Source: Mobula hypostoma (Eukaryota). Taken from it: DNA of 64,000 bases. Of the stretch, positions 704-59,756 are shown piece after piece. The notes under the pieces were generated by a model. The model searched no databases. It worked only from the letters and a program-made list of their open reading frames with translations, and was not told the DNA's origin. The stretch covers positions 23,064,001 to 23,128,000 of the forward strand of contig NC_086121.1 in the NCBI RefSeq assembly GCF_963921235.1, in the 5' to 3' direction. How positions within the stretch are numbered: the stretch's first letter is position 1; each line of letters starts with the position of its first letter. The translations under genes and the position numbers were made by a program.

Positions 704-822
704 GACGGACAAAAGGTCTGACACGGACGTGGCGTGTTAAAGGGCCCACGTGCTGGGCGCCTCTGAATTTACGGCGCGTGCGCACACACAGAATGCGGAC
801 GCAGACACACATGCGCGTGCAC

Positions 823-3140: not shown

Positions 3141-3735
3141 ACATGTAGGAGAAGAGTAAGGCTATTTGATCCTGGGTGATTGATCATCTCTCTCAAACCC
3201 ACTCTCCTGCCTTTTCTCCATAACCTTTGATGCTTTTACTAACCAAGAACATATCAACCTCCACTTTAAACATACCCAATGACTTTGCCTCCACAGCTGT
3301 CTAAGGCAATGAAATTCCTTCCCATCTCTGTTCTAAAGGGATGTTCTTCTATTCTGAGACTGTGCCCTCTAGTCCTAGACACTTCCACTACTGGAAATAT
3401 CCTCTCCATGTCCACTCCATCCAGCCCTTTCAAGATTTGGTAGGTTTCAATGAGACCCCTTGTCATCCTTCTAAACTCCAGCGAGCACAGGCCCTGGGCC
3501 ATCAAACGCTCCTTATTTGATAATCATTCTGTCCCTGGGATCATTTTCATAAACGCCTTCAGGGCCATCTCCAATGCTAGCACATCCTTTCTTAGATACG
3601 GGGCCTAAAACTACCTGCAAAGTTCTAAATGTGGTCGGACCATCACCTTATAAAAGTCCGGCATTACATCCTTGCTTTTATATTCTAGTCCTCTTTAAAT
3701 GAAACGCTAACATCGCATTTTTGGCCTTGTACTCC
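3141..3735 (-). mobile_element. CR1-type LINE 3' fragment, degenerate; contains a single-copy homologue of the 61-bp satellite unit at 3361-3421
   Basis: ORF track gives GLCSLEFRRMTRGLIETYQILKGLDGVDMERIFPVVEVSRTRGHSLRIEEHPFRTEMGRNF, the CR1 ORF2 C-terminus. 3361-3421 matches the satellite consensus at ~51/61 positions (counted by eye). Confidence 0.9.
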
Positions 3736-3808
3736 TTGGCATCTATCCAAAAAAATAACATAATCAGCTTTGGCAGACAAACTACGTGGTCAAGCACTGA
3801 TGGAGCAT

Positions 3809-8494: not shown

Positions 8495-8504
8495 TCTTCG
8501 AACA

Positions 8505-8895
8505 ATGCTTTCATGAAAGGACAACCCTCCCATCTTATGACTTAGCCTACTGAATCTCTTCTGGACTGCTTCCAAGACTACCATATCCTTTCTTAGATAA
8601 GAGGATCCAAACTGCACGCAGTGCAGATGCAGCCTCACCAATACCCCGTATATTTGTAACAATATTTCTCTGTTGTTAAACTCCAGTCCCCGGCAATAAT
8701 GCCATTTGTCTTCTTAATTTCGTGCCACATCTGCACACTAATGTTTTGTGCATCATCAACATCAATGCCCAGATCGCTCATCTGCCGTCCCTGTCCAGAC
8801 TCTTTCTGAACCCTCACACCTGCTTTTTGATTCCTTCCACGGAGGCCGCTGACCTCGCACTTCCCCACACCAGAAGTCTCCAGCAAGGGTGTAAA
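8505..8895 (-). mobile_element. Old CR1 LINE ORF2 fragment (post-RT region)
   Basis: LQIYGVLVRLHLHCVQFGSSYLRKDMVVLEAVQKRFSRL and KCEV...RNQKA...SDLG...KKTNGIIA match CR1 ORF2 motifs [24 protein letters not shown] / KKANGML. Confidence 0.82.
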
Positions 8896-9177
8896 ATTCG
8901 GGGTGGCAGGGGAGTGAGACACACCTCACCCACCCGACTCCTCTCCCAGTTAACCGCTCACAGCGAATCTCACATCCAGGAAGGTCTTGCAGAACTCACA
9001 TCACTGTATGCAAAGCCGTAACAGTGAGGATGAAAAGACAAGGAGAGAAGATCAGATTAATCAAGGTCAGTGGTTAGGCGGTAAAGGATTTGCATCTTTA
9101 AACAGGAAGGCTTTGAAAGGAGATGAGTTTCAGCTTCGAGATGAAGAGGTACATTTATAAATAAAATGGGAACTCAC

Positions 9178-9227
9178 CTTCTCTTTGTTCAATGACTCTT
9201 GAGCTTCTAATTTATACACTAGAAAAT
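9178..9227 (-). CDS. GOLIM4: GOLIM4-like gene, 50-nt coding exon (equivalent of human exon 3)
   Basis: ttcctgtctctgcAG|ATTTTCTAGTG...GAGAAG|GTgagt. Encodes (D)FLVYKLEAQESLNKEK versus human DFLVYKLEAQETLNKGR (recalled). Phase 1/0. Confidence 0.93.
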
Positions 9228-9355
9228 CTGCAGAGACAGGAAAGGAAATGGAAATGAATTAACAATCATCAGGAACAGATGAATGCTTTTAATACTTTAA
9301 GCATTAGGCAGTCATCAATATCTCCATCAGACTACAAGGTACAGCAGCAGGCATA

Positions 9356-9545
9356 CCTGCCTTCTCCCCATAACCTTTGATGCTACAGTTGTCTGCGCCA
9401 ATGAATTCCACAGATCCCCCTCCCTCTGGCTAAAGAAATTCCTCCCCATCTCTGTTCTGAAGAGATGTCCTTCTACTCTGAGACTGTGCCCTCTGGCCCT
9501 AGACTCCCCCACTACTGGAAACATCCTCTCCACATCCACTCTATC
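9356..9545 (-). mobile_element. CR1 LINE 3' fragment whose last 61 bp are the first unit of the satellite
   Basis: ORF 9327-9539: DVERMFPVVGESRARGHSLRVEGHLFRTEMGRNFFSQREGDLWNSLAQ. There is an internal deletion before ATCAAAGGTTATGGGGAGAAGGCAGG. The sequence runs without a break into the array at 9485. Confidence 0.92.
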
Positions 9546-12500
9546 TGTGTCCTCTGGTCCGAGACTCCCCCCACCATAGGAAACATCCTCTCCACATCCA
9601 CTCTATCTGTGTCCTCTGGCCCTAGACTCCCCCACTACTGGAAACATCCTCTCCACATCCACTCTATCTGTGTCCTCTGGTCCTAGACTCCCCCACTACT
9701 GGAAACATCCTCTCCACATCCACTCTATCTGTGTCCTCTGGTCCTAGACTCCCCCACTACTGGAAACATCCTCTCCACATCCACTCTACCTGTGTCCTCT
9801 GGTCCGAGACTCCCCCCACCATAGGAAACATCCTCTCCACATCCACTCTATCTGTGTCCTCTGGTCCGAGACTCCCCCACTATAGGAAACATCCTCTCCA
9901 CATCCACTCTATCTGTGTCCTCTGGTCCGAGACTCCCCCACTACTGGAAACATCCTCTCCACATCCACTCTATCTGTGTCCTCTGGTCCGAGACTCCCCC
10001 ACTACTGGAAACATCCTCTCCACATCCACTCTATCTGTGTCCTCTGGTCCGAGACTCCCCCACTATAGGAAACATCCTCTCCACATCCACTCTATCTGTG
10101 TCCTCTGGTCCGAGACTCCCCCACTACTGGAAACATCCTCTCCACATCCACTCTATCTGTGTCCTCTGGTCCGAGACTCCCCCACTACTGGAAACATCCT
10201 CTCCACATCCACTCTATCTGTGTCCTCTGGTCCGAGACTCCCCCACTATAGGAAACATCCTCTCCACATCCACTCTATCTGTGTCCTCTGGTCCGAGACT
10301 CCCCCACTACTGGAAACATCCTCTCCACATCCACTCTATCTGTGTCCTCTGGTCCGAGACTCCCCCACTACTGGAAACATCCTCTCCACATCCACTCTAT
10401 CTGTGTCCTCTGGTCCTAGACTCCCCCACTACTGGAAACATCCTCTCCACATCCACTCTACCTGTGTCCTCTGGTCCGAGACTCCCCCACTACTGGAAAC
10501 ATCCTCTCCACATCCACTCTATCTGTGTCCTCTGGTCCGAGACTCCCCCCACCATAGGAAACATCCTCTCCACATTCACTCTACCTGTGTCCTCTGGTCC
10601 GAGACTCCCCCACTACTGGAAACATCCTCTCCACATCCACTCTATCTGTGTCCTCTGGTCCGAGACTCCCCCCACCATAGGAAACATCCTCTCCACATTC
10701 ACTCTACCTGTGTCCTCTGGTCCTAGACTCCCCCACTACTGGAAACATCCTCTCCACATCCACTCTATCTGTGTCCTCTGGCCCTAGACTCCCCCACTAC
10801 TGGAAACATCCTCTCCACATCCACTCTATCTGTGTCCTCTGGCCCTAGACTCCCCCACTACTGGAAACATCCTCTCCACATCCACTCTATCTGTGCCCTC
10901 TGGCCCTAGACTCCCCCACTACTGGAAACATCCTCTCCACATCCACTCTATCTGTGTCCTCTGGCCCTAGACTCCCCCACTACTGGAAACATCCTCTCCA
11001 CATCCACTCTATCTGTGCCCTCTGGCCCTAGACTCCCCCACTACTGGAAACATCCTCTCCACATCCACTCTATCTGTGTCCTCTGGTCCTAGACTCCCCC
11101 ACTACTGGAAACATCCTCTCCACATCCACTCTATCTGTGTCCTCTGGTCCGAGACTCCCCCACTACTGGAAACATCCTCTCCACATCCACTCTATCTGTG
11201 TCCTCTGGTCCGAGACTCCCCCACTACTGGAAACATCCTCTCCACATCCACTCTATCTGTGTCCTCTGGTCCGAGACTCCCCCACTACTGGAAACATCCT
11301 CTCCACATCCACTCTATCTGTGTCCTCTGGTCCTAGACTCCCCCACTATAGGAAACATCCTCTCCACATCCACTCTACCTGTGTCCTCTGGTCCTAGACT
11401 CCCCCACTACTGGAAACATCCTCTCCACATCCACTCTATCTGTGTCCTCTGGCCCTAGACTCCCCCACTACTGGAAACATCCTCTCCACATCCACTCTAT
11501 CTGTGTCCTCTGGTCCGAGACTCCCCCACTACTGGAAACATCCTCTCCACATCCACTCTATCTGTGTCCTCTGGTCCGAGACTCCCCCACTACTGGAAAC
11601 ATCCTCTCCACATCCACTCTATCTGTGTCCTCTGGTCCGAGACTCCCCCACTACTGGAAACATCCTCTCCACATCCACTCTATCTGTGTCCTCTGGCCCT
11701 AGACTCCCCCACTACTGGAAACATCCTCTCCACATCCACTCTATCTGTGTCCTCTGGCCCTAGACTCCCCCACTACTGGAAACATCCTCTCCACATCCAC
11801 TCTATCTGTGCCCTCTGGCCCTAGACTCCCCCACTACTGGAAACATCCTCTCCACATCCACTCTATCTGTGTCCTCTGGCCCTAGACTCCCCCACTACTG
11901 GAAACATCCTCTCCACATCCACTCTATCTGTGCCCTCTGGCCCTAGACTCCCCCACTACTGGAAACATCCTCTCCACATCCACTCTATCTGTGTCCTCTG
12001 GTCCTAGACTCCCCCACTACTGGAAACATCCTCTCCACATCCACTCTATCTGTGTCCTCTGGTCCGAGACTCCCCCACTACTGGAAACATCCTCTCCACA
12101 TCCACTCTATCTGTGTCCTCTGGTCCGAGACTCCCCCACTACTGGAAACATCCTCTCCACATCCACTCTATCTGTGTCCTCTGGTCCGAGACTCCCCCAC
12201 TACTGGAAACATCCTCTCCACATCCACTCTATCTGTGTCCTCTGGTCCTAGACTCCCCCACTATAGGAAACATCCTCTCCACATCCACTCTACCTGTGTC
12301 CTCTGGTCCTAGACTCCCCCACTACTGGAAACATCCTCTCCACATCCACTCTATCTGTGTCCTCTGGCCCTAGACTCCCCCACTACTGGAAACATCCTCT
12401 CCACATCCACTCTATCTGTGTCCTCTGGTCCGAGACTCCCCCACTACTGGAAACATCCTCTCCACATCCACTCTATCTGTGTCCTCTGGTCCGAGACTCC

Positions 12501-15500
12501 CCCACTACTGGAAACATCCTCTCCACATCCACTCTATCTGTGTCCTCTGGTCCGAGACTCCCCCACTACTGGAAACATCCTCTCCACATCCACTCTATCT
12601 GTGTCCTCTGGTCCGAGACTCCCCCACTACTGGAAACATCCTCTCCACATCCACTCTATCTGTGTCCTCTGGCCCTAGACTCCCCCACTACTGGAAACAT
12701 CCTCTCCACATCCACTCTATCTGTGTCCTCTGGTCCTAGACTCCCCCACTATAGGAAACATCCTCTCCACATCCACTCTACCTGTGTCCTCTGGTCCTAG
12801 ACTCCCCCACTACTGGAAACATCCTCTCCACATCCACTCTATCTGTGTCCTCTGGTCCTAGACTCCCCCACTACTGGAAACATCCTCTCCACATCCACTC
12901 TATCTGTGTCCTCTGGTCCGAGACTCCCCCACTACTGGAAACATCCTCTCCACATCCACTCTATCTGTGTCCTCTGGTCCGAGACTCCCCCACTACTGGA
13001 AACATCCTCTCCACATCCACTCTATCTGTGTCCTCTGGCCCTAGACTCCCCCACTACTGGAAACATCCTCTCCACATCCACTCTATCTGTGCCCTCTGGC
13101 CCTAGACTCCCCCACTACTGGAAACATCCTCTCCACATCCACTCTATCTGTGTCCTCTGGTCCGAGACTCCCCCACTACTGGAAACATCCTCTCCACATC
13201 CACTCTATCTGTGTCCTCTGGTCCGAGACTCCCCCACTACTGGAAACATCCTCTCCACATCCACTCTATCTGTGTCCTCTGGTCCGAGACTCCCCCACTA
13301 CTGGAAACATCCTCTCCACATCCACTCTATCTGTGTCCTCTGGTCCTAGACTCCCCCACTACTGGAAACATCCTCTCCACATCCACTCTATCTGTGTCCT
13401 CTGGTCCGAGACTCCCCCACTACTGGAAACATCCTCTCCACATCCACTCTATCTGTGTCCTCTGGCCCTAGACTCCCCCACTACTGGAAACATCCTCTCC
13501 ACATCCACTCTATCTGTGTCCTCTGGTCCGAGACTCCCCCACTATAGGAAACATCCTCTCCACATCCACTCTATCTGTGTCCTCTGGTCCGAGACTCCCC
13601 CACTACTGGAAACATCCTCTCCACATCCACTCTATCTGTGTCCTCTGGTCCTAGACTCCCCCACTACTGGAAACATCCTCTCCACATCCACTCTATCTGT
13701 GTCCTCTGGCCCTAGACTCCCCCACTACTGGAAACATCCTCTCCACATCCACTCTATCTGTGTCCTCTGGTCCGAGACTCCCCCCACCATAGGAAACATC
13801 CTCTCCACATCCACTCTATCTGTGTCCTCTGGTCCGAGACTCCCCCACTACTGGAAACATCCTCTCCACATCCACTCTATCTGTGTCCTCTGGTCCTAGA
13901 CTCCCCCACTACTGGAAACATCCTCTCCACATCCACTCTATCTGTGTCCTCTGGTCCGAGACTCCCCCACTACTGGAAACATCCTCTCCACATCCACTCT
14001 ATCTGTGTCCTCTGGTCCGAGACTCCCCCACTACTGGAAACATCCTCTCCACATCCACTCTATCTGTGTCCTCTGGTCCGAGACTCCCCCACTACTGGAA
14101 ACATCCTCTCCACATCCACTCTATCTGTGTCCTCTGGTCCGAGACTCCCCCACTACTGGAAACATCCTCTCCACATCCACTCTATCTGTGTCCTCTGGTC
14201 CGAGACTCCCCCACTATAGGAAACATCCTCTCCACATCCACTCTATCTGTGTCCTCTGGTCCGAGACTCCCCCACTACTGGAAACATCCTCTCCACATCC
14301 ACTCTATCTGTGTCCTCTGGTCCGAGACTCCCCCACTACTGGAAACATCCTCTCCACATCCACTCTACCTGTGTCCTCTGGTCCGAGACTCCCCCACTAC
14401 TGGAAACATCCTCTCCACATCCACTCTATCTGTGTCCTCTGGTCCTAGACTCCCCCACTACTGGAAACATCCTCTCCACATCCACTCTATCTGTGTCCTC
14501 TGGTCCGAGACTCCCCCACTACTGGAAACATCCTCTCCACATCCACTCTATCTGTGTCCTCTGGCCCTAGACTCCCCCACTACTGGAAACATCCTCTCCA
14601 CATCCACTCTATCTGTGTCCTCTGGTCCGAGACTCCCCCACTACTGGAAACATCCTCTCCACATCCACTCTATCTGTGTCCTCTGGTCCGAGACTCCCCC
14701 ACTACTGGAAACATCCTCTCCACATCCACTCTATCTGTGTCCTCTGGTCCGAGACTCCCCCACTACTGGAAACATCCTCTCCACATCCACTCTACCTGTG
14801 TCCTCTGGCCCTAGACTCTCCCACTACTGGAAACATCCTCTCCACATCCACTCTATCTGTGTCCTCTGGTCCGAGACTCCCCCACTACTGGAAACATCCT
14901 CTCCACATCCACTCTATCTGTGTCCTCTGGTCCGAGACTCCCCCACTACTGGAAACATCCTCTCCACATCCACTCTATCTGTGTCCTCTGGTCCGAGACT
15001 CCCCCACTACTGGAAACATCCTCTCCACATCCACTCTACCTGTGTCCTCTGGCCCTAGACTCCCCCACTACTGGAAACATCCTCTCCACATCCACTCTAT
15101 CTGTGTCCTCTGGTCCGAGACTCCCCCACTACTGGAAACATCCTCTCCACATCCACTCTATCTGTGTCCTCTGGCCCTAGACTCCCCCACTACTGGAAAC
15201 ATCCTCTCCACATCCACTCTATCTGTGTCCTCTGGTCCGAGACTCCCCCACTACTGGAAACATCCTCTCCACATCCACTCTATCTGTGTCCTCTGGTCCA
15301 AGACTCCCCCACTACTGGAAACATCCTCTCCACATCCACTCTATCTGTGTCCTCTGGTCCGAGACTCCCCCACTACTGGAAACATCCTCTCCACATCCAC
15401 TCTATCTGTGTCCTCTGGTCCGAGACTCCCCCACTACTGGAAACATCCTCTCCACATCCACTCTATCTGTGCCCTCTGGTCCGAGACTCCCCCACTATAG

Positions 15501-18500
15501 GAAACATCCTCTCCACATCCACTCTATCTGTGTCCTCTGGTCCGAGACTCCCCCACTACTGGAAACATCCTCTCCACATCCACTCTATCTGTGTCCTCTG
15601 GTCCGAGACTCCCCCGACTACTGGAAACATCCTCTCCACATCCACTCTATCTGTGTCCTCTGGTCCGAGACTCCCCCACTACTGGAAACATCCTCTCCAC
15701 ATCCACTCTATCTGTGTCCTCTGGTCCGAGACTCCCCCACTACTGGAAACATCCTCTCCACATCCACTCTATCTGTGTCCTCTGGCCCTAGACTCCCCCC
15801 ACCATAGGAAACATCCTCTCCACATCCACTCTACCTGTGTCCTCTGGTCCGAGACTCCCCCACTACTGGAAACATCCTCTCCACATCCACTCTATCTGTG
15901 CCCTCTGGCCCTAGACTCCCCCACTACTGGAAACATCCTCTCCACATCCACTCTATCTGTGTCCTCTGGTCCGAGACTCCCCCACTACTGGAAACATCCT
16001 CTCCACATCCACTCTATCTGTGTCCTCTGGCCCTAGACTCCCCCACTACTGGAAACATCCTCTCCACATCCACTCTATCTGTGTCCTCTGGTCCGAGACT
16101 CCCCCACTACTGGAAACATCCTCTCCACATCCACTCTATCTGTGTCCTCTGGTCCTAGACTCCCCCACTACTGGAAACATCCTCTCCACATCCACTCTAT
16201 CTGTGTCCTCTGGTCCGAGACTCCCCCACTACTGGAAACATCCTCTCCACATCCACTCTACCTGTGTCCTCTAGCCCTAGACTCCCCCACTACAGGAAAC
16301 ATCCTCTCCACATCCACTCTATCTGTGTCCTCTGGTCCGAGACTCCCCCACTACTGGAAACATCCTCTCCACATCCACTCTATCTGTGTCCTCTGGTCCT
16401 AGACTCCCCCACTACTGGAAACATCCTCTCCACATCCACTCTATCTGTGTCCTCTGGTCCGAGACTCCCCCACTACTGGAAACATCCTCTCCACATCCAC
16501 TCTATCTGTGTCCTCTGGTCCGAGACTCCCCCACTACTGGAAACATCCTCTCCACATCCACTCTATCTGTGTCCTCTGGTCCGAGACTCCCCCACTACTG
16601 GAAACATCCTCTCCACATCCACTCTATCTGTGTCCTCTGGTCCGAGACTCCCCCCACCATAGGAAACATCCTCTCCACATCCACTCTATCTGTGTCCTCT
16701 GGTCCGAGACTCCCCCACTACTGGAAACATCCTCTCCACATCCACTCTATCTGTGTCCTCTGGTCCGAGACTCCCCCACTACTGGAAACATCCTCTCCAC
16801 ATCCACTCTATCTGTGTCCTCTGGTCCGAGACTCCCCCCACCATAGGAAACATCCTCTCCACATCCACTCTATCTGTGTCCTCTGGTCCGAGACTCCCCC
16901 ACTACTGGAAACATCCTCTCCACATCCACTCTATCTGTGTCCTCTGGCCCTAGACTCCCCCACTACTGGAAACATCCTCTCCACATCCACTCTATCTGTG
17001 TCCTCTGGCCCTAGACTCCCCCACTACTGGAAACATCCTCTCCACATCCACTCTATCTGTGCCCTCTGGCCCTAGACTCCCCCACTACTGGAAACATCCT
17101 CTCCACATCCACTCTATCTGTGTCCTCTGGCCCTAGACTCCCCCACTACTGGAAACATCCTCTCCACATCCACTCTATCTGTGCCCTCTGGCCCCAGACT
17201 CCCCCACTACTGGAAACATCCTCTCCACATCCACTCTATCTGTGTCCTCTGGTCCTAGACTCCCCCACTACTGGAAACATCCTCTCCACATCCACTCTAT
17301 CTGTGTCCTCTGGTCCGAGACTCCCCCACTACTGGAAACATCCTCTCCACATCCACTCTATCTGTGTCCTCTGGTCCGAGACTCCCCCACTACTGGAAAC
17401 ATCCTCTCCACATCCACTCTATCTGTGTCCTCTGGTCCGAGACTCCCCCACTACTGGAAACATCCTCTCCACATCCACTCTATCTGTGTCCTCTGGTCCT
17501 AGACTCCCCCACTATAGGAAACATCCTCTCCACATCCACTCTATCTGTGTCCTCTGGTCCTAGACTCCCCCACTACTGGAAACATCCTCTCCACATCCAC
17601 TCTATCTGTGTCCTCTGGCCCTAGACTCCCCCACTACTGGAAACATCCTCTCCACATCCACTCTATCTGTGTCCTCTGGTCCGAGACTCCCCCACTACTG
17701 GAAACATCCTCTCCACATCCACTCTATCTGTGTCCTCTGGTCCGAGACTCCCCCACTACTGGAAACATCCTCTCCACATCCACTCTATCTGTGTCCTCTG
17801 GTCCGAGACTCCCCCACTACTGGAAACATCCTCTCCACATCCACTCTATCTGTGTCCTCTGGCCCTAGACTCCCCCACTACTGGAAACATCCTCTCCACA
17901 TCCACTCTATCTGTGTCCTCTGGCCCTAGACTCCCCCACTACTGGAAACATCCTCTCCACATCCACTCTATCTGTGTCCTCTGGCCCTAGACTCCCCCAC
18001 TACTGGAAACATCCTCTCCACATCCACTCTATCTGTGTCCTCTGGCCCTAGACTCCCCCACTACTGGAAACATCCTCTCCACATCCACTCTATCTGTGCC
18101 CTCTGGCCCTAGACTCCCCCACTACTGGAAACATCCTCTCCACATCCACTCTATCTGTGTCCTCTGGTCCTAGACTCCCCCACTACTGGAAACATCCTCT
18201 CCACATCCACTCTATCTGTGTCCTCTGGTCCGAGACTCCCCCACTACTGGAAACATCCTCTCCACATCCACTCTATCTGTGTCCTCTGGTCCGAGACTCC
18301 CCCACTACTGGAAACATCCTCTCCACATCCACTCTATCTGTGTCCTCTGGTCCGAGACTCCCCCACTACTGGAAACATCCTCTCCACATCCACTCTATCT
18401 GTGTCCTCTGGTCCTAGACTCCCCCACTATAGGAAACATCCTCTCCACATCCACTCTACCTGTGTCCTCTGGTCCTAGACTCCCCCACTACTGGAAACAT

Positions 18501-21500
18501 CCTCTCCACATCCACTCTATCTGTGTCCTCTGGCCCTAGACTCCCCCACTACTGGAAACATCCTCTCCACATCCACTCTATCTGTGTCCTCTGGTCCGAG
18601 ACTCCCCCACTACTGGAAACATCCTCTCCACATCCACTCTATCTGTGTCCTCTGGTCCGAGACTCCCCCACTACTGGAAACATCCTCTCCAAATCCACTC
18701 TATCTGTGTCCTCTGGTCCGAGACTCCCCCACTACTGGAAACATCCTCTCCACATCCACTCTATCTGTGTCCTCTGGTCCGAGACTCCCCCACTACTGGA
18801 AACATCCTCTCCACATCCACTCTATCTGTGTCCTCTGGCCCTAGACTCCCCCACTACTGGAAACATCCTCTCCACATCCACTCTATCTGTGTCCTCTGGT
18901 CCTAGACTCCCCCACTATAGGAAACATCCTCTCCACATCCACTCTACCTGTGTCCTCTGGTCCTAGACTCCCCCACTACTGGAAACATCCTCTCCACATC
19001 CACTCTATCTGTGTCCTCTGGTCCTAGACTCCCCCACTACTGGAAACATCCTCTCCACATCCACTCTATCTGTGTCCTCTGGTCCGAGACTCCCCCACTA
19101 CTGGAAACATCCTCTCCACATCCACTCTATCTGTGTCCTCTGGTCCGAGACTCCCCCACTACTGGAAACATCCTCTCCACATCCACTCTATCTGTGTCCT
19201 CTGGCCCTAGACTCCCCCACTACTGGAAACATCCTCTCCACATCCACTCTATCTGTGCCCTGGCCCTAGACTCCCCCACTACTGGAAACATCCTCTCCAC
19301 ATCCACTCTATCTGTGTCCTCTGGTCCGAGACTCCCCCACTACTGGAAACATCCTCTCCACATCCACTCTATCTGTGTCCTCTGGTCCGAGACTCCCCCA
19401 CTACTGGAAACATCCTCTCCACATCCACTCTATCTGTGTCCTCTGGTCCGAGACTCCCCCACTACTGGAAACATCCTCTCCACATCCACTCTATCTGTGT
19501 CCTCTGGTCCTAGACTCCCCCACTACTGGAAACATCCTCTCCACATCCACTCTATCTGTGTCCTCTGGTCCGAGACTCCCCCACTACTGGAAACATCCTC
19601 TCCACATCCACTCTATCTGTGTCCTCTGGCCCTAGACTCCCCCACTACTGGAAACATCCTCTCCACATCCACTCTATCTGTGTCCTCTGGTCCGAGACTC
19701 CCCCACTATAGGAAACATCCTCTCCACATCCACTCTATCTGTGTCCTCTGGTCCGAGACTCCCCCACTACTGGAAACATCCTCTCCACATCCACTCTATC
19801 TGTGTCCTCTGGTCCTAGACTCCCCCACTACTGGAAACATCCTCTCCACATCCACTCTATCTGTGTCCTCTGGCCCTAGACTCCCCCACTACTGGAAACA
19901 TCCTCTCCACATCCACTCTATCTGTGTCCTCTGGTCCGAGACTCCCCCACCATAGGAAACATCCTCTCCACATCCACTCTATCTGTGTCCTCTGGTCCGA
20001 GACTCCCCCACTACTGGAAACATCCTCTCCACATCCACTCTATCTGTGTCCTCTGGTCCTAGACTCCCCCACTACTGGAAACATCCTCTCCACATCCACT
20101 CTATCTGTGTCCTCTGGTCCGAGACTCCCCCACTACTGGAAACATCCTCTCCACATCCACTCTATCTGTGTCCTCTGGTCCGAGACTCCCCCACTACTGG
20201 AAACATCCTCTCCACATCCACTCTATCTGTGTCCTCTGGTCCGAGACTCCCCCACTACTGGAAACATCCTCTCCACATCCACTCTATCTGTGTCCTCTGG
20301 TCCGAGACTCCCCCACTACTGGAAACATCCTCTCCACATCCACTCTATCTGTGTCCTCTGGTCCGAGACTCCCCCACTATAGGAAACATCCTCTCCACAT
20401 CCACTCTATCTGTGTCCTCTGGTCCGAGACTCCCCCACTACTGGAAACATCCTCTCCACATCCACTCTATCTGTGTCCTCTGGTCCGAGACTCCCCCACT
20501 ACTGGAAACATCCTCTCCACATCCACTCTATCTGTGTCCTCTGGTCCGAGACTCCCCCACTACTGGAAACATCCTCTCCACATCCACTCTATCTGTGTCC
20601 TCTGGTCCTAGACTCCCCCACTACTGGAAACATCCTCTCCACATCCACTCTATCTGTGTCCTCTGGTCCGAGACTCCCCCACTACTGGAAACATCCTCTC
20701 CACATCCACTCTATCTGTGTCCTCTGGCCCTAGACTCCCCCACTACTGGAAACATCCTCTCCACATCCACTCTATCTGTGTCCTCTGGTCCGAGACTCCC
20801 CCACTACTGGAAACATCCTCTCCACATCCACTCTATCTGTGTCCTCTGGTCCGAGACTCCCCCACTACTGGAAACATCCTCTCCACATCCACTCTATCTG
20901 TGTCCTCTGGTCCGAGACTCCCCCACTACTGGAAACATCCTCTCCACATCCACTCTACCTGTGTCCTCTGGCCCTAGACTCTCCCACTACTGGAAACATC
21001 CTCTCCACATCCACTCTATCTGTGTCCTCTGGTCCGAGACTCCCCCACTACTGGAAACATCCTCTCCACATCCACTCTATCTGTGTCCTCTGGTCCGAGA
21101 CTCCCCCACTACTGGAAACATCCTCTCCACATCCACTCTATCTGTGTCCTCTGGTCCGAGACTCCCCCACTACTGGAAACATCCTCTCCACATCCACTCT
21201 ACCTGTGTCCTCTGGCCCTAGACTCCCCCACTACTGGAAACATCCTCTCCACATCCACTCTATCTGTGTCCTCTGGTCCGAGACTCCCCCACTACTGGAA
21301 ACATCCTCTCCACATCCACTCTATCTGTGTCCTCTGGCCCTAGACTCCCCCACTACTGGAAACATCCTCTCCACATCCACTCTATCTGTGTCCTCTGGTC
21401 CGAGACTCCCCCACTACTGGAAACATCCTCTCCACATCCACTCTATCTGTGTCCTCTGGTCCGAGACTCCCCCACTACTGGAAACATCCTCTCCACATCC

Positions 21501-48500: not shown

Positions 48501-51500
48501 CTCTGGTCCGAGACTCCCCCACTACTGGAAACATCCTCTCCACATCCACTCTATCTGTGTCCTCTGGCCCTAGACTCCCCCACTACTGGAAACATCCTCT
48601 CCACATCCACTCTATCTGTGTCCTCTGGTCCGAGACTCCCCCACTACTGGAAACATCCTCTCCACATCCACTCTATCTGTGTCCTCTGGTCCGAGACTCC
48701 CCCACTACTGGAAACATCCTCTCCACATCCACTCTATCTGTGTCCTCTGGTCCGAGACTCCCCCACTACTGGAAACATCCTCTCCACATCCACTCTATCT
48801 GTGTCCTCTGGTCCGAGACTCCCCCACTACTGGAAACATCCTCTCCACATCCACTCTATCTGTGTCCTCTGGTCCTAGACTCCCCCACTACTGGAAACAT
48901 CCTCTCCACATCCACTCTACCTGTGTCCTCTGGTCCTAGACTCCCCCACTACTGGAAACATCCTCTCCACATCCACTCTATCTGTGTCCTCTGGTCCGAG
49001 ACTCCCCCACTACTGGAAACATCCTCTCCACATCCACTCTATCTGTGTCCTCTGGTCCGAGACTCCCCCACTACTGGAAACATCCTCTCCACATCCACTC
49101 TATCTGTGTCCTCTGGTCCGAGACTCCCCCACTACTGGAAACATCCTCTCCACATCCACTCTATCCTGTGTCCTCTGGTCCGAGACTCCCCCACTACTGG
49201 AAACATCCTCTCCACATCCACTCTATCTGTGTCCTCTGGCCCTAGACTCCCCCACTACTGGAAACATCCTCTCCACATCCACTCTATCTGTGTCCTCTGG
49301 TCCGAGACTCCCCCACTACTGGAAACATCCTCTCCACATCCACTCTATCTGTGTCCTCTGGTCCGAGACTCCCCCACTACTGGAAACATCCTCTCCACAT
49401 CCACTCTATCTGTGTCCTCTGGCCCTAGACTCCCCCACTACTGGAAACATCCTCTCCACATTCACTCTATCTGTGTCCTCTGGCCCTAGACTCCCCCACT
49501 ACTGGAAACATCCTCTCCACATCCACTCTATCTGTGTCCTCTGGTCCGAGACTCCCCCACTACTGGAAACATCCTCTCCACATCCACTCTATCTGTGTCC
49601 TCTGGTCCGAGACTCCCCCACTACTGGAAACATCCTCTCCACATCCACTCTATCTGTGTCCTCTGGTCCGAGACTCCCCCACTACTGGAAACATCCTCTC
49701 CACATCCACTCTATCTGTGTCCTCTGGTCCTAGACTCCCCCACTACTGGAAACATCCTCTCCACATCCACTCTATCTGTGTCCTCTGGCCCTAGACTCCC
49801 CCACTACTGGAAACATCCTCTCCACATCCACTCTATCTGTGTCCTCTGGTCCTAGACTCCCCCACTACAGGAAACATCCTCTCCACATCCACTCTATCTG
49901 TGTCCTCTGGTCCGAGACTCCCCCCACTACTGGAAACATCCTCTCCACATCCACTCTATCTGTGTCCTCTGGTCCGAGACTCCCCCACTACTGGAAACAT
50001 CCTCTCCACATCCACTCTATCTGTGTCCTCTGGTCCTAGACTCCCCCACTACTGGAAACATCCTCTCCACATCCACTCTATCTGTGTCCTCTGGCCCTAG
50101 ACTCCCCCCACTACTGGAAACATCCTCTCCACATCCACTCTATCTGTGTCCTCTGGTCCGAGACTCCCCCCACTACTGGAAACATCCTCTCCACATCCAC
50201 TCTATCTGTGTCCTCTGGTCCAGACTCCCCCACTACAGGAAACATCCTCTCCACATCCACTCTACCTGTGTCCTCTGGTCCTAGACTCCCCCACTACTGG
50301 AAACATCCTCTCCACATCCACTCTATCTGTGTCCTCTGGCCCTAGACTCCCCCACTACTGGAAACATCCTCTCCACATTCACTCTATCTGTGTCCTCTGG
50401 CCTAGACTCCCCCACTACTGGAAACATCCTCTCCACATTCACTCTACCTGTGTCCTCTGGCCCTAGACTCCCCCACTACTGGAAACATCCTCTCCACATT
50501 CACTCTATCTGTGTCCTCTGGCCCTAGACTCCCCCACTACTGGAAACATCCTCTCCACATCCACTCTATCTGTGTCCTCTGGCCCTAGACTCCCCCACTA
50601 CTGGAAACATCCTCTCCACATCCACTCTATCTGTGTCCTCTGGCCCTAGACTCCCCCACTACTGGAAACATCCTCTCCACATCCACTCTATCTGTGTCCT
50701 CTGGCCCTAGACTCCCCCACTACTGGAAACATCCTCTCCACATCCACTCTATCTGTGTCCTCTGGCCCTAGACTCCCCCACTACTGGAAACATCCTCTCC
50801 ACATCCACTCTATCTGTGTCCTCTGGCCCTAGACTCCCCCACTACTGGAAACATCCTCTCCACATTCACTCTACCTGTGTCCTCTGGTCCTAGACTCCCC
50901 CACTACTGGAAACATCCTCTCCACATCCACTCTATCTGTGTCCTCTGGTCCTAGACTCCCCCACTACTGGAAACATCCTCTCCACATCCACTCTACCTGT
51001 GTCCTCTGGTCCGAGACTCCCCCCACCATAGGAAACATCCTCTCCACATCCACTCTATCTGTGTCCTCTGGTCCGAGACTCCCCCACTACTGGAAACATC
51101 CTCTCCACATCCACTCTACCTGTGTCCTCTGGTCCGAGACTCCCCCACTACTGGAAACATCGTCTCCACATCCACTCTATCTGTGTCCTCTGGTCCTAGA
51201 CTCCCCCACTACTGGAAACATCCTCTCCACATCCACTCTATCTGTGTCCTCTGGTCCGAGACTCCCCCACTACTGGAAACATCCTCTCCACATCCACTCT
51301 ATCTGTGTCCTCTGGCCCTAGACTCCCCCACTACTGGAAACATCCTCTCCACATCCACTCTATCTGTGTCCTCTGGTCCGAGACTCCCCCACTACTGGAA
51401 ACATCCTCTCCACATCCACTCTACCTGTGTCCTCTGGCCCTAGACTCCCCCACTACTGGAAACATCCTCTCCACATCCACTCTACCTGTGTCCTCTGGTC

Positions 51501-54500
51501 CTAGACTCCCCCACTACTGGAAACATCCTCTCCACATCCACTCTATCTGTGTCCTCTGGTCCGAGACTCCCCCACTACTGGAAACATCCTCTCCACATCC
51601 ACTCTATCTGTGTCCTCTGGTCCGAGACTCCCCCACTACTGGAAACATCCTCTCCACATCCACTCTACCTGTGTCCTCTGGCCCTAGACTCCCCCACTAC
51701 TGGAAACATCCTCTCCACATCCACTCTATCTGTGTCCTCTGGTCCGAGACTCCCCCACTACTGGAAACATCCTCTCCACATCCACTCTATCTGTGTCCTC
51801 TGGTCCGAGACTCCCCCACTACTGGAAACATCCTCTCCACATCCACTCTATCTGTGTCCTCTGGCCCTAGACTCCCCCACTACTGGAAACATCCTCTCCA
51901 CATCCACTCTATCTGTGTCCTCTGGCCCTAGACTCCCCCACTACTGGAAACATCCTCTCCACATCCACTCTATCTGTGTCCTCTGGTCCGAGACTCCCCC
52001 ACTACTGGAAACATCCTCTCCACATCCACTCTATCTGTGTCCTCTGGTCCGAGACTCCCCCACTACTGGAAACATCCTCTCCACATCCACTCTATCTGTG
52101 TCCTCTGGTCCGAGACTCCCCCACTATAGGAAACATCCTCTCCACATCCACTCTATCTGTGTCCTCTGGTCCGAGACTCCCCCACTACTGGAAACATCCT
52201 CTCCACATCCACTCTACCTGTGTCCTCTGGTCCTAGACTCCCCCACTACTGGAAACATCCTCTCCACATCCACTCTACCTGTGTCCTCTGGTCCTAGACT
52301 CCCCCACTACTGGAAACATCCTCTCCACATCCACTCTATCTGTGTCCTCTGGCCCTAGACTCCCCCACTACTGGAAACATCCTCTCCACATCCACTCTAT
52401 CTGTGTCCTCTGGCCCTAGACTCCCCCACTACTGGAAACATCCTCTCCACATCCACTCTATCTGTGTCCTCTGGTCCGAGACTCCCCCACTACTGGAAAC
52501 ATCCTCTCCACATCCACTCTATCTGTGTCCTCTGGTCCGAGACTCCCCCACTACTGGAAACATCCTCTCCACATCCACTCTATCTGTGTCCTCTGGTCCT
52601 AGACTCCCCCACTACTGGAAACATCCTCTCCACATCCACTCTATCTGTGTCCTCTGGTCCTAGACTCCCCCACTACAGGAAACATCCTCTCCACATCCAC
52701 TCTATCTGTGTCCTCTGGTCCTAGACTCCCCCACTACTGGAAACATCCTCTCCACATCCACTCTATCTGTGTCCTCTGGTCCTAGACTCCCCCACTACTG
52801 GAAACATCCTCTCCACATCCACTCTACCTGTGTCCTCTGGTCCGAGACTCCCCCCACTACTGGAAACATCCTCTCCACATCCACTCTATCTGTGTCCTCT
52901 GGTCCTAGACTCCCCCACTACTGGAAACATCCTCTCCACATCCACTCTACCTGTGTCCTCTGGTCCTAGACTCCCCCACTATAGGAAACATCCTCTCCAC
53001 ATCCACTCTATCTGTGTCCTCTGGTCCTAGACTCCCCCACTACTGGAAACATCCTCTCCACATCCACTCTATCTGTGTCCTCTGGCCCTAGACTCCCCCA
53101 CTACTGGAAACATCCTCTCCACATCCACTCTATCTGTGTCCTCTGGTCCTAGACTCCCCCACTACTGGAAACATCCTCTCCACATCCACTCTACCTGTGT
53201 CCTCTGGCCCTAGACTCCCCCACTATAGGAAACATCCTCTCCACATCCACTCTATCTGTGTCCTCTGGTCCTAGACTCCCCCACTACTGGAAACATCCTC
53301 TCCACATCCACTCTACCTGTGTCCTCTGGCCCTAGACTCCCCCACTACTGGAAACATCCTCTCCACATCCACTCTATCTGTGTCCTCTGGCCCTAGACTC
53401 CCCCACTACTGGAAACATCCTCTCCACATCCACTCTATCTGTGTCCTCTGGTCCGAGACTCCCCCACTACTGGAAACATCCTCTCCACATCCACTCTACC
53501 TGTGTCCTCTGGTCCGAGACTCCCCCACTACTGGAAACATCCTCTCCACATCCACTCTATCTGTGTCCTCTGGTCCTAGACTCCCCCACTACTGGAAACA
53601 TCCTCTCCACATCCACTCTATCTGTGTCCTCTGGCCCTAGACTCCCCCACTACTGGAAACATCCTCTCCACATCCACTCTATCTGTGTCCTCTGGTCCTA
53701 GACTCGCCCACTACAGGAAACATCCTCTCCATATCCACTCTATCTGTGTCCTCTGGTCCGAGACTCCCCCACTACTGGAAACATCCTCTCCACATCCACT
53801 CTATCTGTGTCCTCTGGTCCTAGACTCCCCCACTACTGGAAACATCCTCTCCACATCCACTCTATCTGTGTCCTCTGGTCCTAGACTCCCCCACTATAGG
53901 AAACATCCTCTCCACATTCACTCTATCTGTGTCCTCTGGTCCTAGACTCCCCCACTACTGGAAACATCCTCTCCACATCCACTCTATCTGTGTCCTCTGG
54001 TCCTAGACTCCCCCACTACTGGAAACATCCTCTCCACATCCACTCTATCTGTGTCCTCTGGTCCTAGACTCCCCCACTACTGGAAACATCCTCTCCACAT
54101 CCACTCTATCTGTGTCCTCTGGTCCTAGACTCCCCCACTACTGGAAACATCCTCTCCACATCCACTCTATCTGTGTCCTCTGGTCCTAGACTCCCCCACT
54201 ATAGGAAACATCCTCTCCACATCCACTCTATCTGTGTCCTCTGGTCCTAGACTCCCCCACTATAGGAAACATCCTCTCCACATCCACTCTATCTGTGTCC
54301 TCTGGTCCGAGACTCCCCCACTACTGGAAACATCCTCTCCACATCCACTCTATCTGTGTCCTCTGGTCCTAGACTCCCCCACTACTGGAAACATCCTCTC
54401 CACATCCACTCTATCTGTGTCCTCTGGTCCGAGACTCGCCCACTACAGGAAACATCCTCTCCATATCCACTCTATCTGTGTCCTCTGGTCCGAGACTCCC

Positions 54501-57500
54501 CCACTACTGGAAACATCCTCTCCACATCCACTCTATCTGTGTCCTCTGGTCCTAGACTCCCCCACTACTGGAAACATCCTCTCCACATCCACTCTATCTG
54601 TGTCCTCTGGTCCTAGACTCCCCCACTATAGGAAACATCCTCTCCACATTCACTCTATCTGTGTCCTCTGGTCCTAGACTCCCCCACTACTGGAAACATC
54701 CTCTCCACATCCACTCTATCTGTGTCCTCTGGTCCTAGACTCCCCCACTACTGGAAACATCCTCTCCACATCCACTCTATCTGTGTCCTCTGGCCCTAGA
54801 CTCCCCCACTACTGGAAACATCCTCTCCACATCCACTCTATCTGTGTCCTCTGGTCCTAGACTCCCCCACTACTGGAAACATCCTCTCCACATCCACTCT
54901 AACTGTGTCCTCTGGTCCTAGACTCCCCCACTACTGGAAACATCCTCTCCACATCCACTCTATCTGTGTCCTCTGGTCCTAGACTCCCCCACTATAGGAA
55001 ACATCCTCTCCACATCCACTCTATCTGTGTCCTCTGGTCCTAGACTCCCCCACTACTGGAAACATCCTCTCCACATCCACTCTACCTGTGTCCTCTGGTC
55101 CTAGACTCCCCCACTACTGGAAACATCCTCTCCACATCCACTCTACCTGTGTCCTCTGGTCCTAGACTCCCCCACTACTGGAAACATCCTCTCCACATCC
55201 ACTCTATCTGTGTCCTCTGGTCCTAGACTCCCCCACTACTGGAAACATCCTCTCCACATCCACTCTATCTGTGTCCTCTGGTCCTAGACTCCCCCACTAC
55301 TGGAAACATCCTCTCCACATCCACTCTATCTGTGTCCTCTGGTCCGAGACTCCCCCACTACTGGAAACATCCTCTCCACATCCACTCTATCTGTGTCCTC
55401 TGGTCCTAGACTCCCCCACTACTGGAAACATCCTCTCCACATCCACTCTATCTGTGTCCTCTGGCCCTAGACTCCCCCACTACTGGAAACATCCTCTCCA
55501 CATCCACTCTATCTGTGTCCTCTGGTCCGAGACTCCCCCACTACTGGAAACATCCTCTCCACATCCACTCTATCTGTGTCCTCTGGTCCGAGACTCCCCC
55601 ACTACTGGAAACATCCTCTCCACATCCACTCTATCTGTGTCCTCTGGCCCTAGACTCCCCCACTACTGGAAACATCCTCTCCACATCCACTCTATCTGTG
55701 TCCTCTGGCCCTAGACTCCCCCACTACTGGAAACATCCTCTCCACATCCACTCTATCTGTGTCCTCTGGTCCTAGACTCCCCCACTACTGGAAACATCCT
55801 CTCCACATCCACTCTACCTGTGTCCTCTGGTCCTAGACTCCCCCACTATAGGAAACATCCTCTCCACATCCACTCTATCTGTGTCCTCTGGTCCAAGACT
55901 CCCCCACTACTGGAAACATCCTCTCCACATCCACTCTATCTGTGTCCTCTGGTCCGAGACTCCCCCACTACTGGAAACATCCTCTCCACATCCACTCTAT
56001 CTGTGTCCTCTGGTCCGAGACTCCCCCACTACTGGAAACATCCTCTCCACATCCACTCTATCTGAGTCCTCTGGCCCTAGACTCCCCCACTACTGGAAAC
56101 ATCCTCTCCACATCCACTCTATCTGTGTCCTCTGGTCCTAGACTCCCCCACTATAGGAAACATCCTCTCCACATCCACTCTACCTGTGTCCTCTGGTCCG
56201 AGACTCCCCCACTACTGGAAACATCCTCTCCACATCCACTCTATCTGTGTCCTCTGGTCCTAGACTCCCCCACTACTGGAAACATCCTCTCCACATCCAC
56301 TCTATCTGTGTCCTCTGGTCCGAGACTCCCCCACTACTGGAAACATCCTCTCCACATCCACTCTATCTGTGTCCTCTGGTCCTAGGCTCCCCTACTACAG
56401 GAAACATCCTCTCCACATCCACCCTATCTGTGTCCTCTGGTCCGAGACTCTCCCAGTATAGGAAACATCCTCTCCACATCCACTCTATCTGTGTCCTCTG
56501 GTCCGAGACTCCCCCACTACTGGAAACATCCTCTCCACATCCACTCTATCTGTGTCCTCTGGTCCTAGACTCCCCCACTATTGGAAACATCCTCTCCACA
56601 TCCACTCTATCTGTGTCCTCTGGTCCGAGACTCCCCCACTACTGGAAACATCCTCTCCACATCCACTCTATCTGTGTCCTCTGGTCCGAGACTCCCCCAC
56701 TACTGGAAACATCCTCTCCACATCCACTCTACCTGTGTCCTCTGGTCCGAGACTCCCCCACTACTGGAAACATCCTCTCCACATCCACTCTATCTGTGTC
56801 CTCTGGTCCTAGACTCCCCCACTACTGGAAACATCCTCTCCACATCCACTCTATCTGTGTCCTCTGGTCCTAGACTCCCCCACTACTGGAAACATCCTCT
56901 CCACATCCACTCTATCTGTGTCCTCTGGTCCTAGACTCCCCCACTACTGGAAACATCCTCTCCACATCCACTCTATCTGTGTCCTCTGGTCCTAGACTCC
57001 CCCACTACTGGAAACATCCTCTCCACATCCACTCTATCTGTGTCCTCTGGTCCTAGACTCCCCCACTACTGGAAACATCCTCTCCACATCCACTCTACCT
57101 GTGTCCTCTGGTCCTAGACTCCCCCACTACTGGAAACATCCTCTCCACATCCACTCTATCTGTGTCCTCTGGCCCTAGACTCCCCCACTACTGGAAACAT
57201 CCTCTCCACATCCACTCTATCTGTGTCCTCTGGTCCGAGACTCCCCCACTACTGGAAACATCCTCTCCACATCCACTCTATCTGTGTCCTCTGGTCCAGA
57301 CTCCCCCACTACTGGAAACATCCTCTCCACATCCACTCTATCTGTGTCCTCTGGTCCGAGACTCCCCCACTACTGGAAACATCCTCTCCACATCCACTCT
57401 ATCTGTGTCCTCTGGTCCTAGACTCCCCCACTACTGGAAACATCCTCTCCACATCCACTCTACCTGTGTCCTCTGGTCCTAGACTCCCCCACTACTGGAA

Positions 57501-59556
57501 ACATCCTCTCCACATCCACTCTATCTGTGTCCTCTGGCCCTAGACTCCCCCACTACTGGAAACATCCTCTCCACATCCACTCTATCTGTGTCCTCTGGTC
57601 CAGACTCCCCCACTACTGGAAACATCCTCTCCACATCCACTCTATCTGTGTCCTCTGGTCCGAGACTCCCCCACTACTGGAAACATCCTCTCCACATCCA
57701 CTCTATCTGTGTCCTCTGGTCCTAGACTCCCCCACTACTGGAAACATCCTCTCCACATCCACTCTATCTGTGTCCTCTGGTCCGAGACTCCCCCACTACT
57801 GGAAACATCCTCTCCACATCCACTCTATCTGTGTCCTCTGGCCCTAGACTCCCCCCACCATAGGAAACATCCTCTCCACATCCACTCTATCTGTGTCCTC
57901 TGGCCCTAGACTCCCCCCACTACAGGAAACATCCTCTCCACATCCACTCTATCTGTGTCCTCTGGTCCTAGACTCCCCCCACTACTGGAAACATCCTCTC
58001 CACATCCACTCTATCTGTGTCCTCTGGTCCTAGACTCCCCCACTACTGGAAACATCCTCTCCACATCCACTCTATCTGTGTCCTCTGGTCCTAGACTCCC
58101 CCACTACAGGAAACATCCTCTCCACATCCACTCTATCTGTGTCCTCTGGTCCTAGACTCCCCCACTACAGGAAACATCCTCTCCACATCCACTCTATCTG
58201 TGTCCTCTGGTCCTAGACTCCCCCACTACTGGAAACATCCTCTCCACATCCACTCTACCTGTGTCCTCTGGTCCTAGACTCCCCCCACTACTGGAAACAT
58301 CCTCTCCACATCCACTCTACCTGTGTCCTCTGGTCCTAGACTCCCCCACTACAGGAAACATCCTCTCCACATCCACTCTAGCTGTGTCCTCTGGTCCTAG
58401 ACTCCCCCACTACAGGAAACATCCTCTCCACATCCACTCTGTCTGTGTCCTCTGGTCCGAGACTCCCCACTACAGGAAACATCCTCTCCACATCCACTCT
58501 ATCTGTGTCCTCTGGTCCTAGACTCCCCCACTACTGGAAACATCCTCTCCACATCCACTCTACCTGTGTCCTCTGGTCCTAGACTCCCCCACTACTGGAA
58601 ACATCCTCTCCACATCCACTCTATCTGTGTCCTCTGGTCCAAGACTCCCCCACTACTGGAAACATCCTCTCCACATCCACTCTATCTGTGTCCTCTGGTC
58701 CGAGACTCCCCCACTACTGGAAACATCCTCTCCACATCCACTCTATCTGTGTCCTCTGGCCCTAGACTCCCCCACTACTGGAAACATCCTCTCCACATCC
58801 ACTCTATCTGTGTCCTCTGGTCCGAGACTCCCCCACTACTGGAAACATCCTCTCCACATCCACTCTATCTGTGTCCTCTGGTCCTAGACTCCCCCACTAC
58901 TGGAAACATCCTCTCCACATCCACTCTATCTGTGTCCTCTGGTCCAGAGACTCCCCCACTACTGGAAACATCCTCTCCACATCCACTCTATCTGTGTCCT
59001 CTGGTCCGAGACTCCCCCACTACTGGAAACATCCTCTCCACATCCACTCTATCTGTGTCCTCTGGCCCTAGACTCCCCCACTACTGGAAACATCCTCTCC
59101 ACATTCACTCTACCTGTGTCCTCTGGTCCGAGACTCCCCCACTACTGGAAACATCCTCTCCACATCCACTCTATCTGTGTCCTCTGGTCCGAGACTCCCC
59201 CACTACAGGAAACATCCTCTCCACATCCACTCTATCTGTGTCCTCTGGTCCGAGACTCCCCCACTACTGGAAACATCCTCTCCACATCCACTCTACCTGT
59301 GTCCTCTGGTCCGAGACTCCCCCACTACTGGAAACATCCTCTCCACATCCACTCTATCTGTGTCCTCTGGTCCGAGACTCCCCCACTACTGGAAACATCC
59401 TCTCCACATCCACTCTACCTGTGTCCTCTGGCCCTAGACTCCCCCACTACTGGAAACATCCTCTCCACATCCACTCTATCTGTGTCCTCTGGTCCTAGAC
59501 TCCCCCACTACTGGAAACATCCTCTCCACATCCACTCTATCTGTGTCCTCTGGTCC
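9485..59556. repeat. CR1-LINE-derived 61-bp satellite, ~50 kb, ~820 copies, with multi-kb higher-order structure
   Basis: Consensus TGTGTCCTCTGGTCCGAGACTCCCCCACTACTGGAAACATCCTCTCCACATCCACTCTATC, head-to-tail. Few recurrent variants (GGTCCG/GGTCCT/GGCCCT; CTACTGG/CTATAGG/CTACAGG/CCATAGG; TATC/TACC; C5/C6). Truncated by the gap. Confidence 0.99.
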
Positions 59557-59756
59557 NNNNNNNNNNNNNNNNNNNNNNNNNNNNNNNNNNNNNNNNNNNN
59601 NNNNNNNNNNNNNNNNNNNNNNNNNNNNNNNNNNNNNNNNNNNNNNNNNNNNNNNNNNNNNNNNNNNNNNNNNNNNNNNNNNNNNNNNNNNNNNNNNNNN
59701 NNNNNNNNNNNNNNNNNNNNNNNNNNNNNNNNNNNNNNNNNNNNNNNNNNNNNNNN
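59557..59756. other. Assembly gap (200 N, probably a fixed-size scaffold join)
   Basis: Run of exactly 200 N between two unrelated satellites. Confidence 0.97.

What the first reader, a model, noticed from the sequence alone, without database searches (positions are those of the whole stretch)
9356..59556. A ~50-kb satellite apparently born in situ from 61 bp of a CR1 LINE coding region, with its parent copy still attached
Seen: the reverse complement of the monomer encodes RVDVERMFPVVGESRTRGH, part of the CR1 ORF2 C-terminus. The array's first unit (9485-9545) is continuous with the rest of a LINE 3' end (9356-9484) and keeps the LINE-like TGTGCCC start that most later units have as TGTGTCC. 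An unamplified homologue sits in another CR1 copy at 3361-3421 (~51/61 identical), so ancestor-type and amplified states are both in the window. Established: TE-derived satellites are known in general. Inference: this one amplified at this locus, possibly at the 5'-truncation point of the insertion, giving an unusually complete snapshot of a LINE-to-satellite transition. I do not recognise this satellite as described, but cannot confirm novelty.
Basis: partly seen in the sequence, partly recalled or inferred. Interest (0 to 1): 0.8.

Follow-up and report, generated by a model that had tools for sequence, protein, structure and literature searches.

The report
LINE-derived 61-bp satellite array
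A dead copy of a common jumping gene (a CR1-type LINE) in a stingray genome has had 61 bases of its coding sequence copied head-to-tail more than 820 times, giving at least 50 kb of satellite DNA still joined to its parent; it is a clean example of a process that is already well known.

Summary
Window 9484-59556 is one uninterrupted tandem array: period 61, about 820 units, 97.6% mean pairwise identity. It runs into a 200-N assembly gap, so 50 kb is a minimum. The reverse complement of the consensus reads RVDVERMFPVVGESRTRGH. This stretch is homologous to the conserved C-terminal region of CR1-type LINE ORF2 proteins, about 140 residues after the reverse-transcriptase domain. The first unit continues without a break into the rest of a minus-strand CR1 3' fragment. 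That fragment reaches about 9324, not 9356, and has two internal deletions.

Three corrections. The LINE-like TGTGCCC start is not unique to unit 1: 12 units have it (a 13th is a 59-bp half-unit), nearly all in the LINE-proximal 10 kb. Unit 1 carries a non-LINE base at position 14. Identity to the unamplified copy at 3360-3420 is 52/61.

There is no regular higher-order repeat. The array grew by block duplications of 0.9 to 10.7 kb.

Birth at this locus is the best reading (about 0.65), but it could not be tested genome-wide and the far junction lies in the gap. LINE-ORF2-derived and CR1-derived satellites are already described. The scan has also noted several other TE-born arrays in this same genome. 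I rate it a new member of a known kind, of modest interest.

The parts
9324..9483 (-). Parent CR1-type LINE fragment (copy B). It holds ORF2 C-terminal codons (HSLRVEGHLFRTEMGRNFFSQREGDLWNSL..., then ...IKGYGEKAG) and the extreme 3' tail. It has two internal deletions and a frameshift.
   Evidence: Minus-strand translation. DNA alignments with copies A, D, E and L001. BLASTP against P0151, E 2e-12, and against the stork CR1-type tail P0057, E 5e-7.
9484..9544 (-). First unit of the array. It is both the next 61 bases of the LINE fragment and unit 1. Its haplotype at unit positions 6/14/17 is C/C/T.
   Evidence: Identical to 8 other units. 52/61 identical to copy A.
9484..59556 (.). 61-bp satellite array: 820 units, uninterrupted by any foreign insertion, strongly C-rich on the + strand (GC skew about -0.54).
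31712..42205 (.). Tandem duplication of a block of about 5.06 kb (83 units) inside the array. 84 of 89 units are identical at an offset of 5064 bp.
10769..22302 (.). Block duplication at an offset of about 6165 bp (75 of 86 units identical). Nested within it is a 15-unit duplication at an offset of 915 bp (10769-12598).
41170..54841 (.). Block duplication at an offset of 10682 bp (38 of 49 units identical).
59557..59756 (.). Assembly gap (200 N) that cuts the array. The far junction and the true array length are unknown.
3209..3700 (-). Unamplified CR1-type copy A. Its homologue of the monomer lies at 3360-3420. It serves as an outgroup for ancestral states.

Best explanation
A 5'-incomplete, dead CR1-type LINE copy lies on the minus strand with its 3' end near 9324. 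A 61-bp piece of its ORF2 C-terminal coding sequence (codons DRVDVERMFPVVGESRTRGH) was duplicated in tandem at the DNA level. The first duplication was probably slippage or a microhomology-mediated event, because the unit ends share only 1-2 bases. The duplicate then expanded by repeated unequal exchange or replication-based block duplication to at least 820 units. New variants spread stepwise while the LINE-like variant survived only at the LINE-proximal edge. The array has no coding capacity in the LINE frame, with a stop in every unit, and there is no sign that the LINE's own enzymes were involved.

Shown: the array, its LINE homology, the seamless junction, the variant chain and the block duplications.

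Inferred: that the first duplication happened at this locus, and its mechanism.
For: The array is real and homogeneous.

LINE homology:
- A search with the copy A ORF found 259 proteins at E<=1e-3. The best are from whale shark, elephant shark and zebra shark, and one is a stork CR1-type tail.
- The copy B ORF aligns to residues 381-449 of P0151, whose RVT_1 domain spans 21-242.
- The copy B ORF aligns to the stork tail at 343-394.
- It is 78% identical in DNA to an independent CR1 copy on a Logan contig.

Junction: the flank and unit 1 are colinear with copy A, and homology stops at the unit end.

Variant chain: haplotypes at unit positions 6/14/17 are CCT 9, TCT 119, TTT 204, TTG 424. TCG and CTT are absent, so the chain is linear. 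The CCT type is the one attached to the LINE and lies within the first 142 units.

Growth by block duplication: offsets of 915, 5064, about 6165 and 10682 bp.

No unit longer than a double unit was found, so there is no TE insertion in 50 kb. This fits recent growth or ongoing turnover.
Against: No genome-wide search was possible, so other arrays of this monomer cannot be excluded.

Unit 1 has C at position 14, where three other CR1 copies have T. It is identical to 8 other units. It may therefore have been overwritten by gene conversion rather than being the untouched ancestor.

Rooting the variant chain at TTT is equally parsimonious. Either rooting needs one coincidence with the LINE state.

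The clustering of C6 units near the edge is inflated by the block duplications. The number of independent events is small.

The far junction is in a gap.
Confidence: 0.65

Rival explanations
1. The 61-bp satellite is a multi-locus family that arose at some other CR1 copy. It reached this locus by ectopic recombination or gene conversion through the shared CR1 homology, or as part of a segmental duplication carrying the flank. The junction then looks seamless although the birth was elsewhere.
For: CR1-group elements make up 22-34% of elasmobranch genomes (PMC13343379), so homologous landing sites are everywhere. Unit 1 is identical to other array units and differs from the LINE state at position 14, as expected if the edge was converted by array sequence.
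Against: Nothing in the window shows a second array. The LINE-like C6 variant is confined to the LINE-proximal edge, which a transferred mature array would not predict. The array was not found in a metagenome scan, two protein searches or the literature, though these blanks are weak.
Confidence: 0.25
2. The first few tandem copies were made by the LINE's reverse transcriptase during insertion, through repeated template switching at the 5' end of the cDNA. DNA-level unequal exchange then did the rest.
For: The array lies on the 5' side of the retained LINE fragment, where target-primed reverse transcription ends. This rests on the geometry only.
Against: There is no direct evidence. The monomer reads GATGTG in the sense strand where copies A and L001 read GACATG. 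Whether this is decay after insertion was not established. The far junction is unseen. A 50-kb array cannot be a retrotransposition product.
Confidence: 0.07
3. Assembly artefact: the array length, the internal block duplications or the LINE-array join were produced by the assembler.
For: The contig ends inside the array at a 200-N gap. Near-perfect multi-kb internal duplications are the kind of thing assemblers can create or collapse.
Against: The join is in phase with LINE homology, and 61 bases is far below long-read length, so a false join is unlikely. The 65 unit variants show structured, non-random order. The existence of a long array is not in doubt, only its exact length.
Confidence: 0.03

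Closest known systems
Satellites derived from LINE ORF2 sequence (PROsat of Phodopus roborovskii, Pvc20 of harbour seal), as listed in the review PMC9659126
   Same: The monomer is a short piece of LINE ORF2 coding sequence amplified in tandem at the DNA level, with loss of coding capacity.
   Different: Those derive from mammalian L1, not CR1. The parent copy attached to the array is not a described feature of them in the text I read. Their chromosomal distribution is known; here it is not.
Chicken HinfI repeat with an embedded CR1 element (Li and Leung 2006, cited in PMC9659126)
   Same: A tandem repeat that contains CR1 3' UTR and partial ORF2 sequence. It is precedent for CR1-to-satellite transitions in vertebrates.
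   Different: According to the review, the chicken repeat contains CR1 3' UTR plus partial ORF2. Here the whole 61-bp unit is CR1 coding sequence and nothing else. I did not compare the sequences.
Other TE-born arrays noted by this scan in the same stingray genome: a 26-bp Rex1/Babar array of 14.9 kb, Penelope-derived arrays of 1.1 and 36 kb, and an LTR-internal array of 19.6 kb
   Same: Same genome and same pattern. A short internal piece of a dead retroelement is expanded in place to tens of kb with the parent still attached.
   Different: A different source element and monomer. This one is the longest listed among those followed up. Those are AI notes that I did not re-test.

Membership tests
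TE-derived satellite DNA | Long head-to-tail array of near-identical monomers | tested here: met
   820 units, period 61, 97.6% mean pairwise identity.
TE-derived satellite DNA | Monomer homologous to an internal segment of a transposable element | tested here: met
   52/61 identity to copy A. 78% DNA identity of unit plus flank to L001. Protein-level matches to ORF2 C-terminal regions.
TE-derived satellite DNA | Satellite family in the strict sense: presence at characteristic chromosomal sites or at several loci | not testable with these tools
   No collection here holds this genome. Metagenome, protein and literature searches were blank.
CR1-group LINE (source of the monomer) | Segment lies in the conserved C-terminal region of an ORF that carries a non-LTR reverse transcriptase domain | tested here: met
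   P0151 has RVT_1 at 21-242. The copy B ORF aligns to residues 381-449, E 2e-12.
CR1-group LINE (source of the monomer) | Similarity to the avian CR1 ORF2 tail | tested here: met
   Alignment to the CR1-type tail embedded in a stork gene model, E 5e-7. That this tail is CR1 rests on my knowledge that CR1 is the dominant LINE of birds.
CR1-group LINE (source of the monomer) | Placement of the RT domain within the CR1 clade rather than L2, Rex1 or Zenon | not tested
   Copy B has no RT domain left. No tree was built. 'CR1-type' is therefore meant in the group sense.
Higher-order-repeat satellite (alpha-satellite-like) | Regular multi-monomer period across the array | tested here: not met
   Unit-identity autocorrelation shows no regular period, only a few local block duplications.

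The most novel reading that the evidence does not exclude
This array is one instance of a genome-wide habit of this stingray lineage. Short internal pieces of many unrelated dead retroelements (CR1, Rex1/Babar, Penelope, LTR elements) are repeatedly expanded in place to arrays of 10-50 kb. That would point to a lineage-specific property of replication or repair, and would make the genome a natural series of satellite births caught at different stages.
Probability: 0.3. Interest if true: 0.6.

Novelty: new member of a known kind. Interest (0 to 1): 0.3.

Why it matters
Satellite origins are usually inferred long after the parent sequence has been lost. Here the parent LINE fragment, the in-phase junction, a stepwise chain of variants and the block duplications that enlarged the array are all readable in one contig. 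It is a tidy teaching example and a possible marker for dating array growth among related stingrays. It does not change what is known about how satellites arise. The more interesting question is why this genome shows so many such cases.

Tried and rejected
- **Array in public data.** I translated the open + strand of the array and searched the 5.8-billion-protein collection with a 250-aa piece and a 92-aa piece. Nothing was found. Short-read assemblies collapse satellites, so these blanks are weak.
- **Metagenome scan.** An exact scan of metagenome contigs for the unit-to-unit junction gave 0 hits.
- **Literature.** A full-text search for four 20-21-mers of the monomer gave 0 papers.
- **Pfam.** No Pfam family covers the CR1 C-terminal pieces, so homology was shown through a protein search instead.
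- **Scan notes.** Look-ups by place and by sequence returned nothing for this locus.
- **Host gene.** The ESM Atlas returned only generic coiled-coil look-alikes. Whether the array lies in an intron remains untested.
- **Regular higher-order repeat.** Rejected.
- **A palindromic CR1 arrangement at 1290-1400.** Reading the sequence showed an ordinary diverged sense-strand copy.
- **A source for the 47-bp satellite.** No similar sequence was found in the left flank.

Full report
**What is there**

Tandem Repeats Finder reports a single array at 9484-59556: period 61, 820.3 copies, 97% matches and no indels to speak of. The array is strongly C-rich on the + strand, with GC skew about -0.54 throughout.

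Cutting the array at the unit start gives 820 units. Of these, 763 are 61 bp, 47 are 62 bp and 8 are 60 bp. One is a double unit whose second half lacks two bases, and the last is a partial unit. There are 65 distinct variants, and mean pairwise identity is 97.6%. No unit is long enough to hide an inserted element, so 50 kb carries no foreign insertion.

The array runs straight into a 200-N gap at 59557-59756. Beyond the gap lies an unrelated 47-bp satellite that continues to the end of the window. Fifty kilobases is therefore a lower bound, and the far junction is unknown.

**What the monomer is**

The reverse complement of the consensus reads RVDVERMFPVVGESRTRGH and then a stop. The minus strand of 9327-9539 continues this as HSLRVEGHLFRTEMGRNFFSQREGDLWNSL. 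After a deletion and a frameshift it reads IKGYGEKAG.

A second, unamplified copy (copy A, about 3209-3700, minus strand) gives the same protein region with more upstream sequence. Pfam has no model for this region. I therefore searched 1.84 billion representative proteins with the copy A ORF.

- 259 proteins scored E<=1e-3.
- Those I looked up come from whale shark, elephant shark, zebra shark and a stork.
- One relative, P0151, carries an RVT_1 domain at residues 21-242. It aligns to the copy B ORF at residues 381-449, E 2e-12.
- The stork protein is a chimeric gene model that contains a typical avian CR1-type tail. It aligns at 343-394, E 5e-7.
- A Logan contig, L001, carries another copy that is 78% identical in DNA to unit 1 plus flank.

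The monomer is therefore a piece of the conserved region that follows the reverse transcriptase in CR1-type ORF2. I did not build an RT tree, and this copy has no RT left. 'CR1' is therefore meant in the group sense. CR1-group elements make up 22-34% of elasmobranch genomes (PMC13343379).

**The junction**

Copy A and copy B are colinear from the shared GYGEKAG-coding stretch through the flank into unit 1. Nothing marks position 9484. Homology to copy A stops exactly at the end of unit 1, where copy A continues with upstream LINE sequence and copy B starts unit 2.

The unit ends share one or two bases with the LINE sequence that would have followed, judged from copy A and L001. This fits slippage or a microhomology-mediated first duplication. 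It is an inference, because copy B's own upstream sequence is gone.

On the other side, 9324-9350 aligns with the extreme 3' tail of copies D, E, A and L001. Copy B therefore has its true 3' end, plus two internal deletions. The parent fragment starts near 9324 rather than 9356.

**Is unit 1 the ancestor?**

Three sites carry most of the variation: unit positions 6, 14 and 17. Other CR1 copies (A, L001 and, for position 14 only, the diverged copy E) indicate C, T, T as the LINE state. Haplotype counts among the 61-bp units are as follows.

| Haplotype (6/14/17) | Units |
|---|---|
| TTG | 424 |
| TTT | 204 |
| TCT | 119 |
| CCT | 9 |
| CTG | 2 |
| other singletons and rare types (TTA 3, CCC 1, TCC 1) | 5 |
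| TCG | 0 |
| CTT | 0 |

This is a linear chain, CCT to TCT to TTT to TTG, with abundance rising along it. The CCT type is the one attached to the LINE. All nine CCT units lie in the first 142 units.

Three cautions apply:
- Unit 1 is not unique. Twelve units start TGTGCCC, and eight other units are identical to unit 1.
- Unit 1 has C at position 14 where the LINE state is T. Either copy B had a private change that the array later reversed, or the chain is rooted at TTT and the edge was overwritten. Each rooting needs one coincidence.
- The block duplications copy the rare units, so their clustering reflects few independent events.

**How the array grew**

There is no regular higher-order repeat. 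Instead there are several large internal duplications.

| Units identical | Offset (bp) | First copy | Second copy |
|---|---|---|---|
| 84 of 89 | 5064 | 31712-37141 | 36776-42205 |
| 75 of 86 | about 6165 | 10769-16139 | 16935-22302 |
| 38 of 49 | 10682 | 41170-44157 | 51852-54841 |
| 15 of 15 | 915 | 10769-11683 | 11684-12598 |

The first of these is a tandem duplication of an 83-unit block. This is the pattern expected from unequal exchange or replication-based duplication within a satellite. An assembler could distort the lengths, but not the existence of the array.

**In situ or not**

Three things favour birth at this copy: the in-phase junction, survival of the LINE-like variant only at the LINE-proximal edge, and the stepwise chain.

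Against certainty, no tool here holds this genome. Searches of metagenome contigs, of predicted proteins (using the open + strand of the array) and of the literature were blank, which says little. CR1 copies are so abundant that an array born in one copy could recombine into another through LINE homology and still look seamless.

I put in-situ birth at about 0.65, a multi-locus family at about 0.25, and the remainder on minor rivals.

**Comparison with what is known**

The review PMC9659126 lists satellites derived from LINE ORF2 (PROsat, Pvc20). It also lists a chicken tandem repeat that contains CR1 3' UTR and partial ORF2.

The scan's own notes describe this genome as a stingray's. They list other arrays grown in place from Rex1/Babar, Penelope-like and LTR elements. 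Those are unchecked AI notes, and I used them only as context.

This array is therefore a new member of a known kind. It is clean, large and well preserved, but not surprising. The recurrence of such arrays in one genome is the more interesting lead, and it needs a genome-wide count.

Noticed in passing
window 59757-63993: A second, unrelated satellite: period 47, about 90 copies, 95% matches, G-rich on the + strand. It starts right after the 200-N gap and runs to the window end. No source sequence was found in the left flank.
   Followed up: partly
window 1290-1640 (+), 3209-3700 (-), 3740-4029 (-), 8447-8662 (-): At least four further CR1-type fragments lie in the 9.4 kb left of the array, in both orientations and at different stages of decay. 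None of them is amplified.
   Followed up: partly
window 9176-9228 (-) and 737-958 (-): Exon-like pieces on the minus strand. One is a 50-nt open segment (reading ...FLVYKLEAQESLNKEK) flanked by a good acceptor and a gtgagt donor. The other is a coiled-coil-like ORF. The ESM Atlas gave only generic coiled-coil look-alikes, so the host gene, and whether the array is intronic, remain open.
   Followed up: partly
window 28784-49489 (+): The consensus unit has no stop in any + strand frame, so the array holds spurious ORFs of up to 920 aa (33361-36123). Ab initio gene finders could call these as proteins.
   Followed up: yes
window 7920-8172: A short minisatellite: period 45 (or 87), about 5.7 copies, 80% matches.
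   Followed up: no
window 4833-5342 (+): A 169-aa acidic ORF with no Pfam match. From memory it resembles the C-terminal part of pogo/Tigger-type transposases. Not tested.
   Followed up: no
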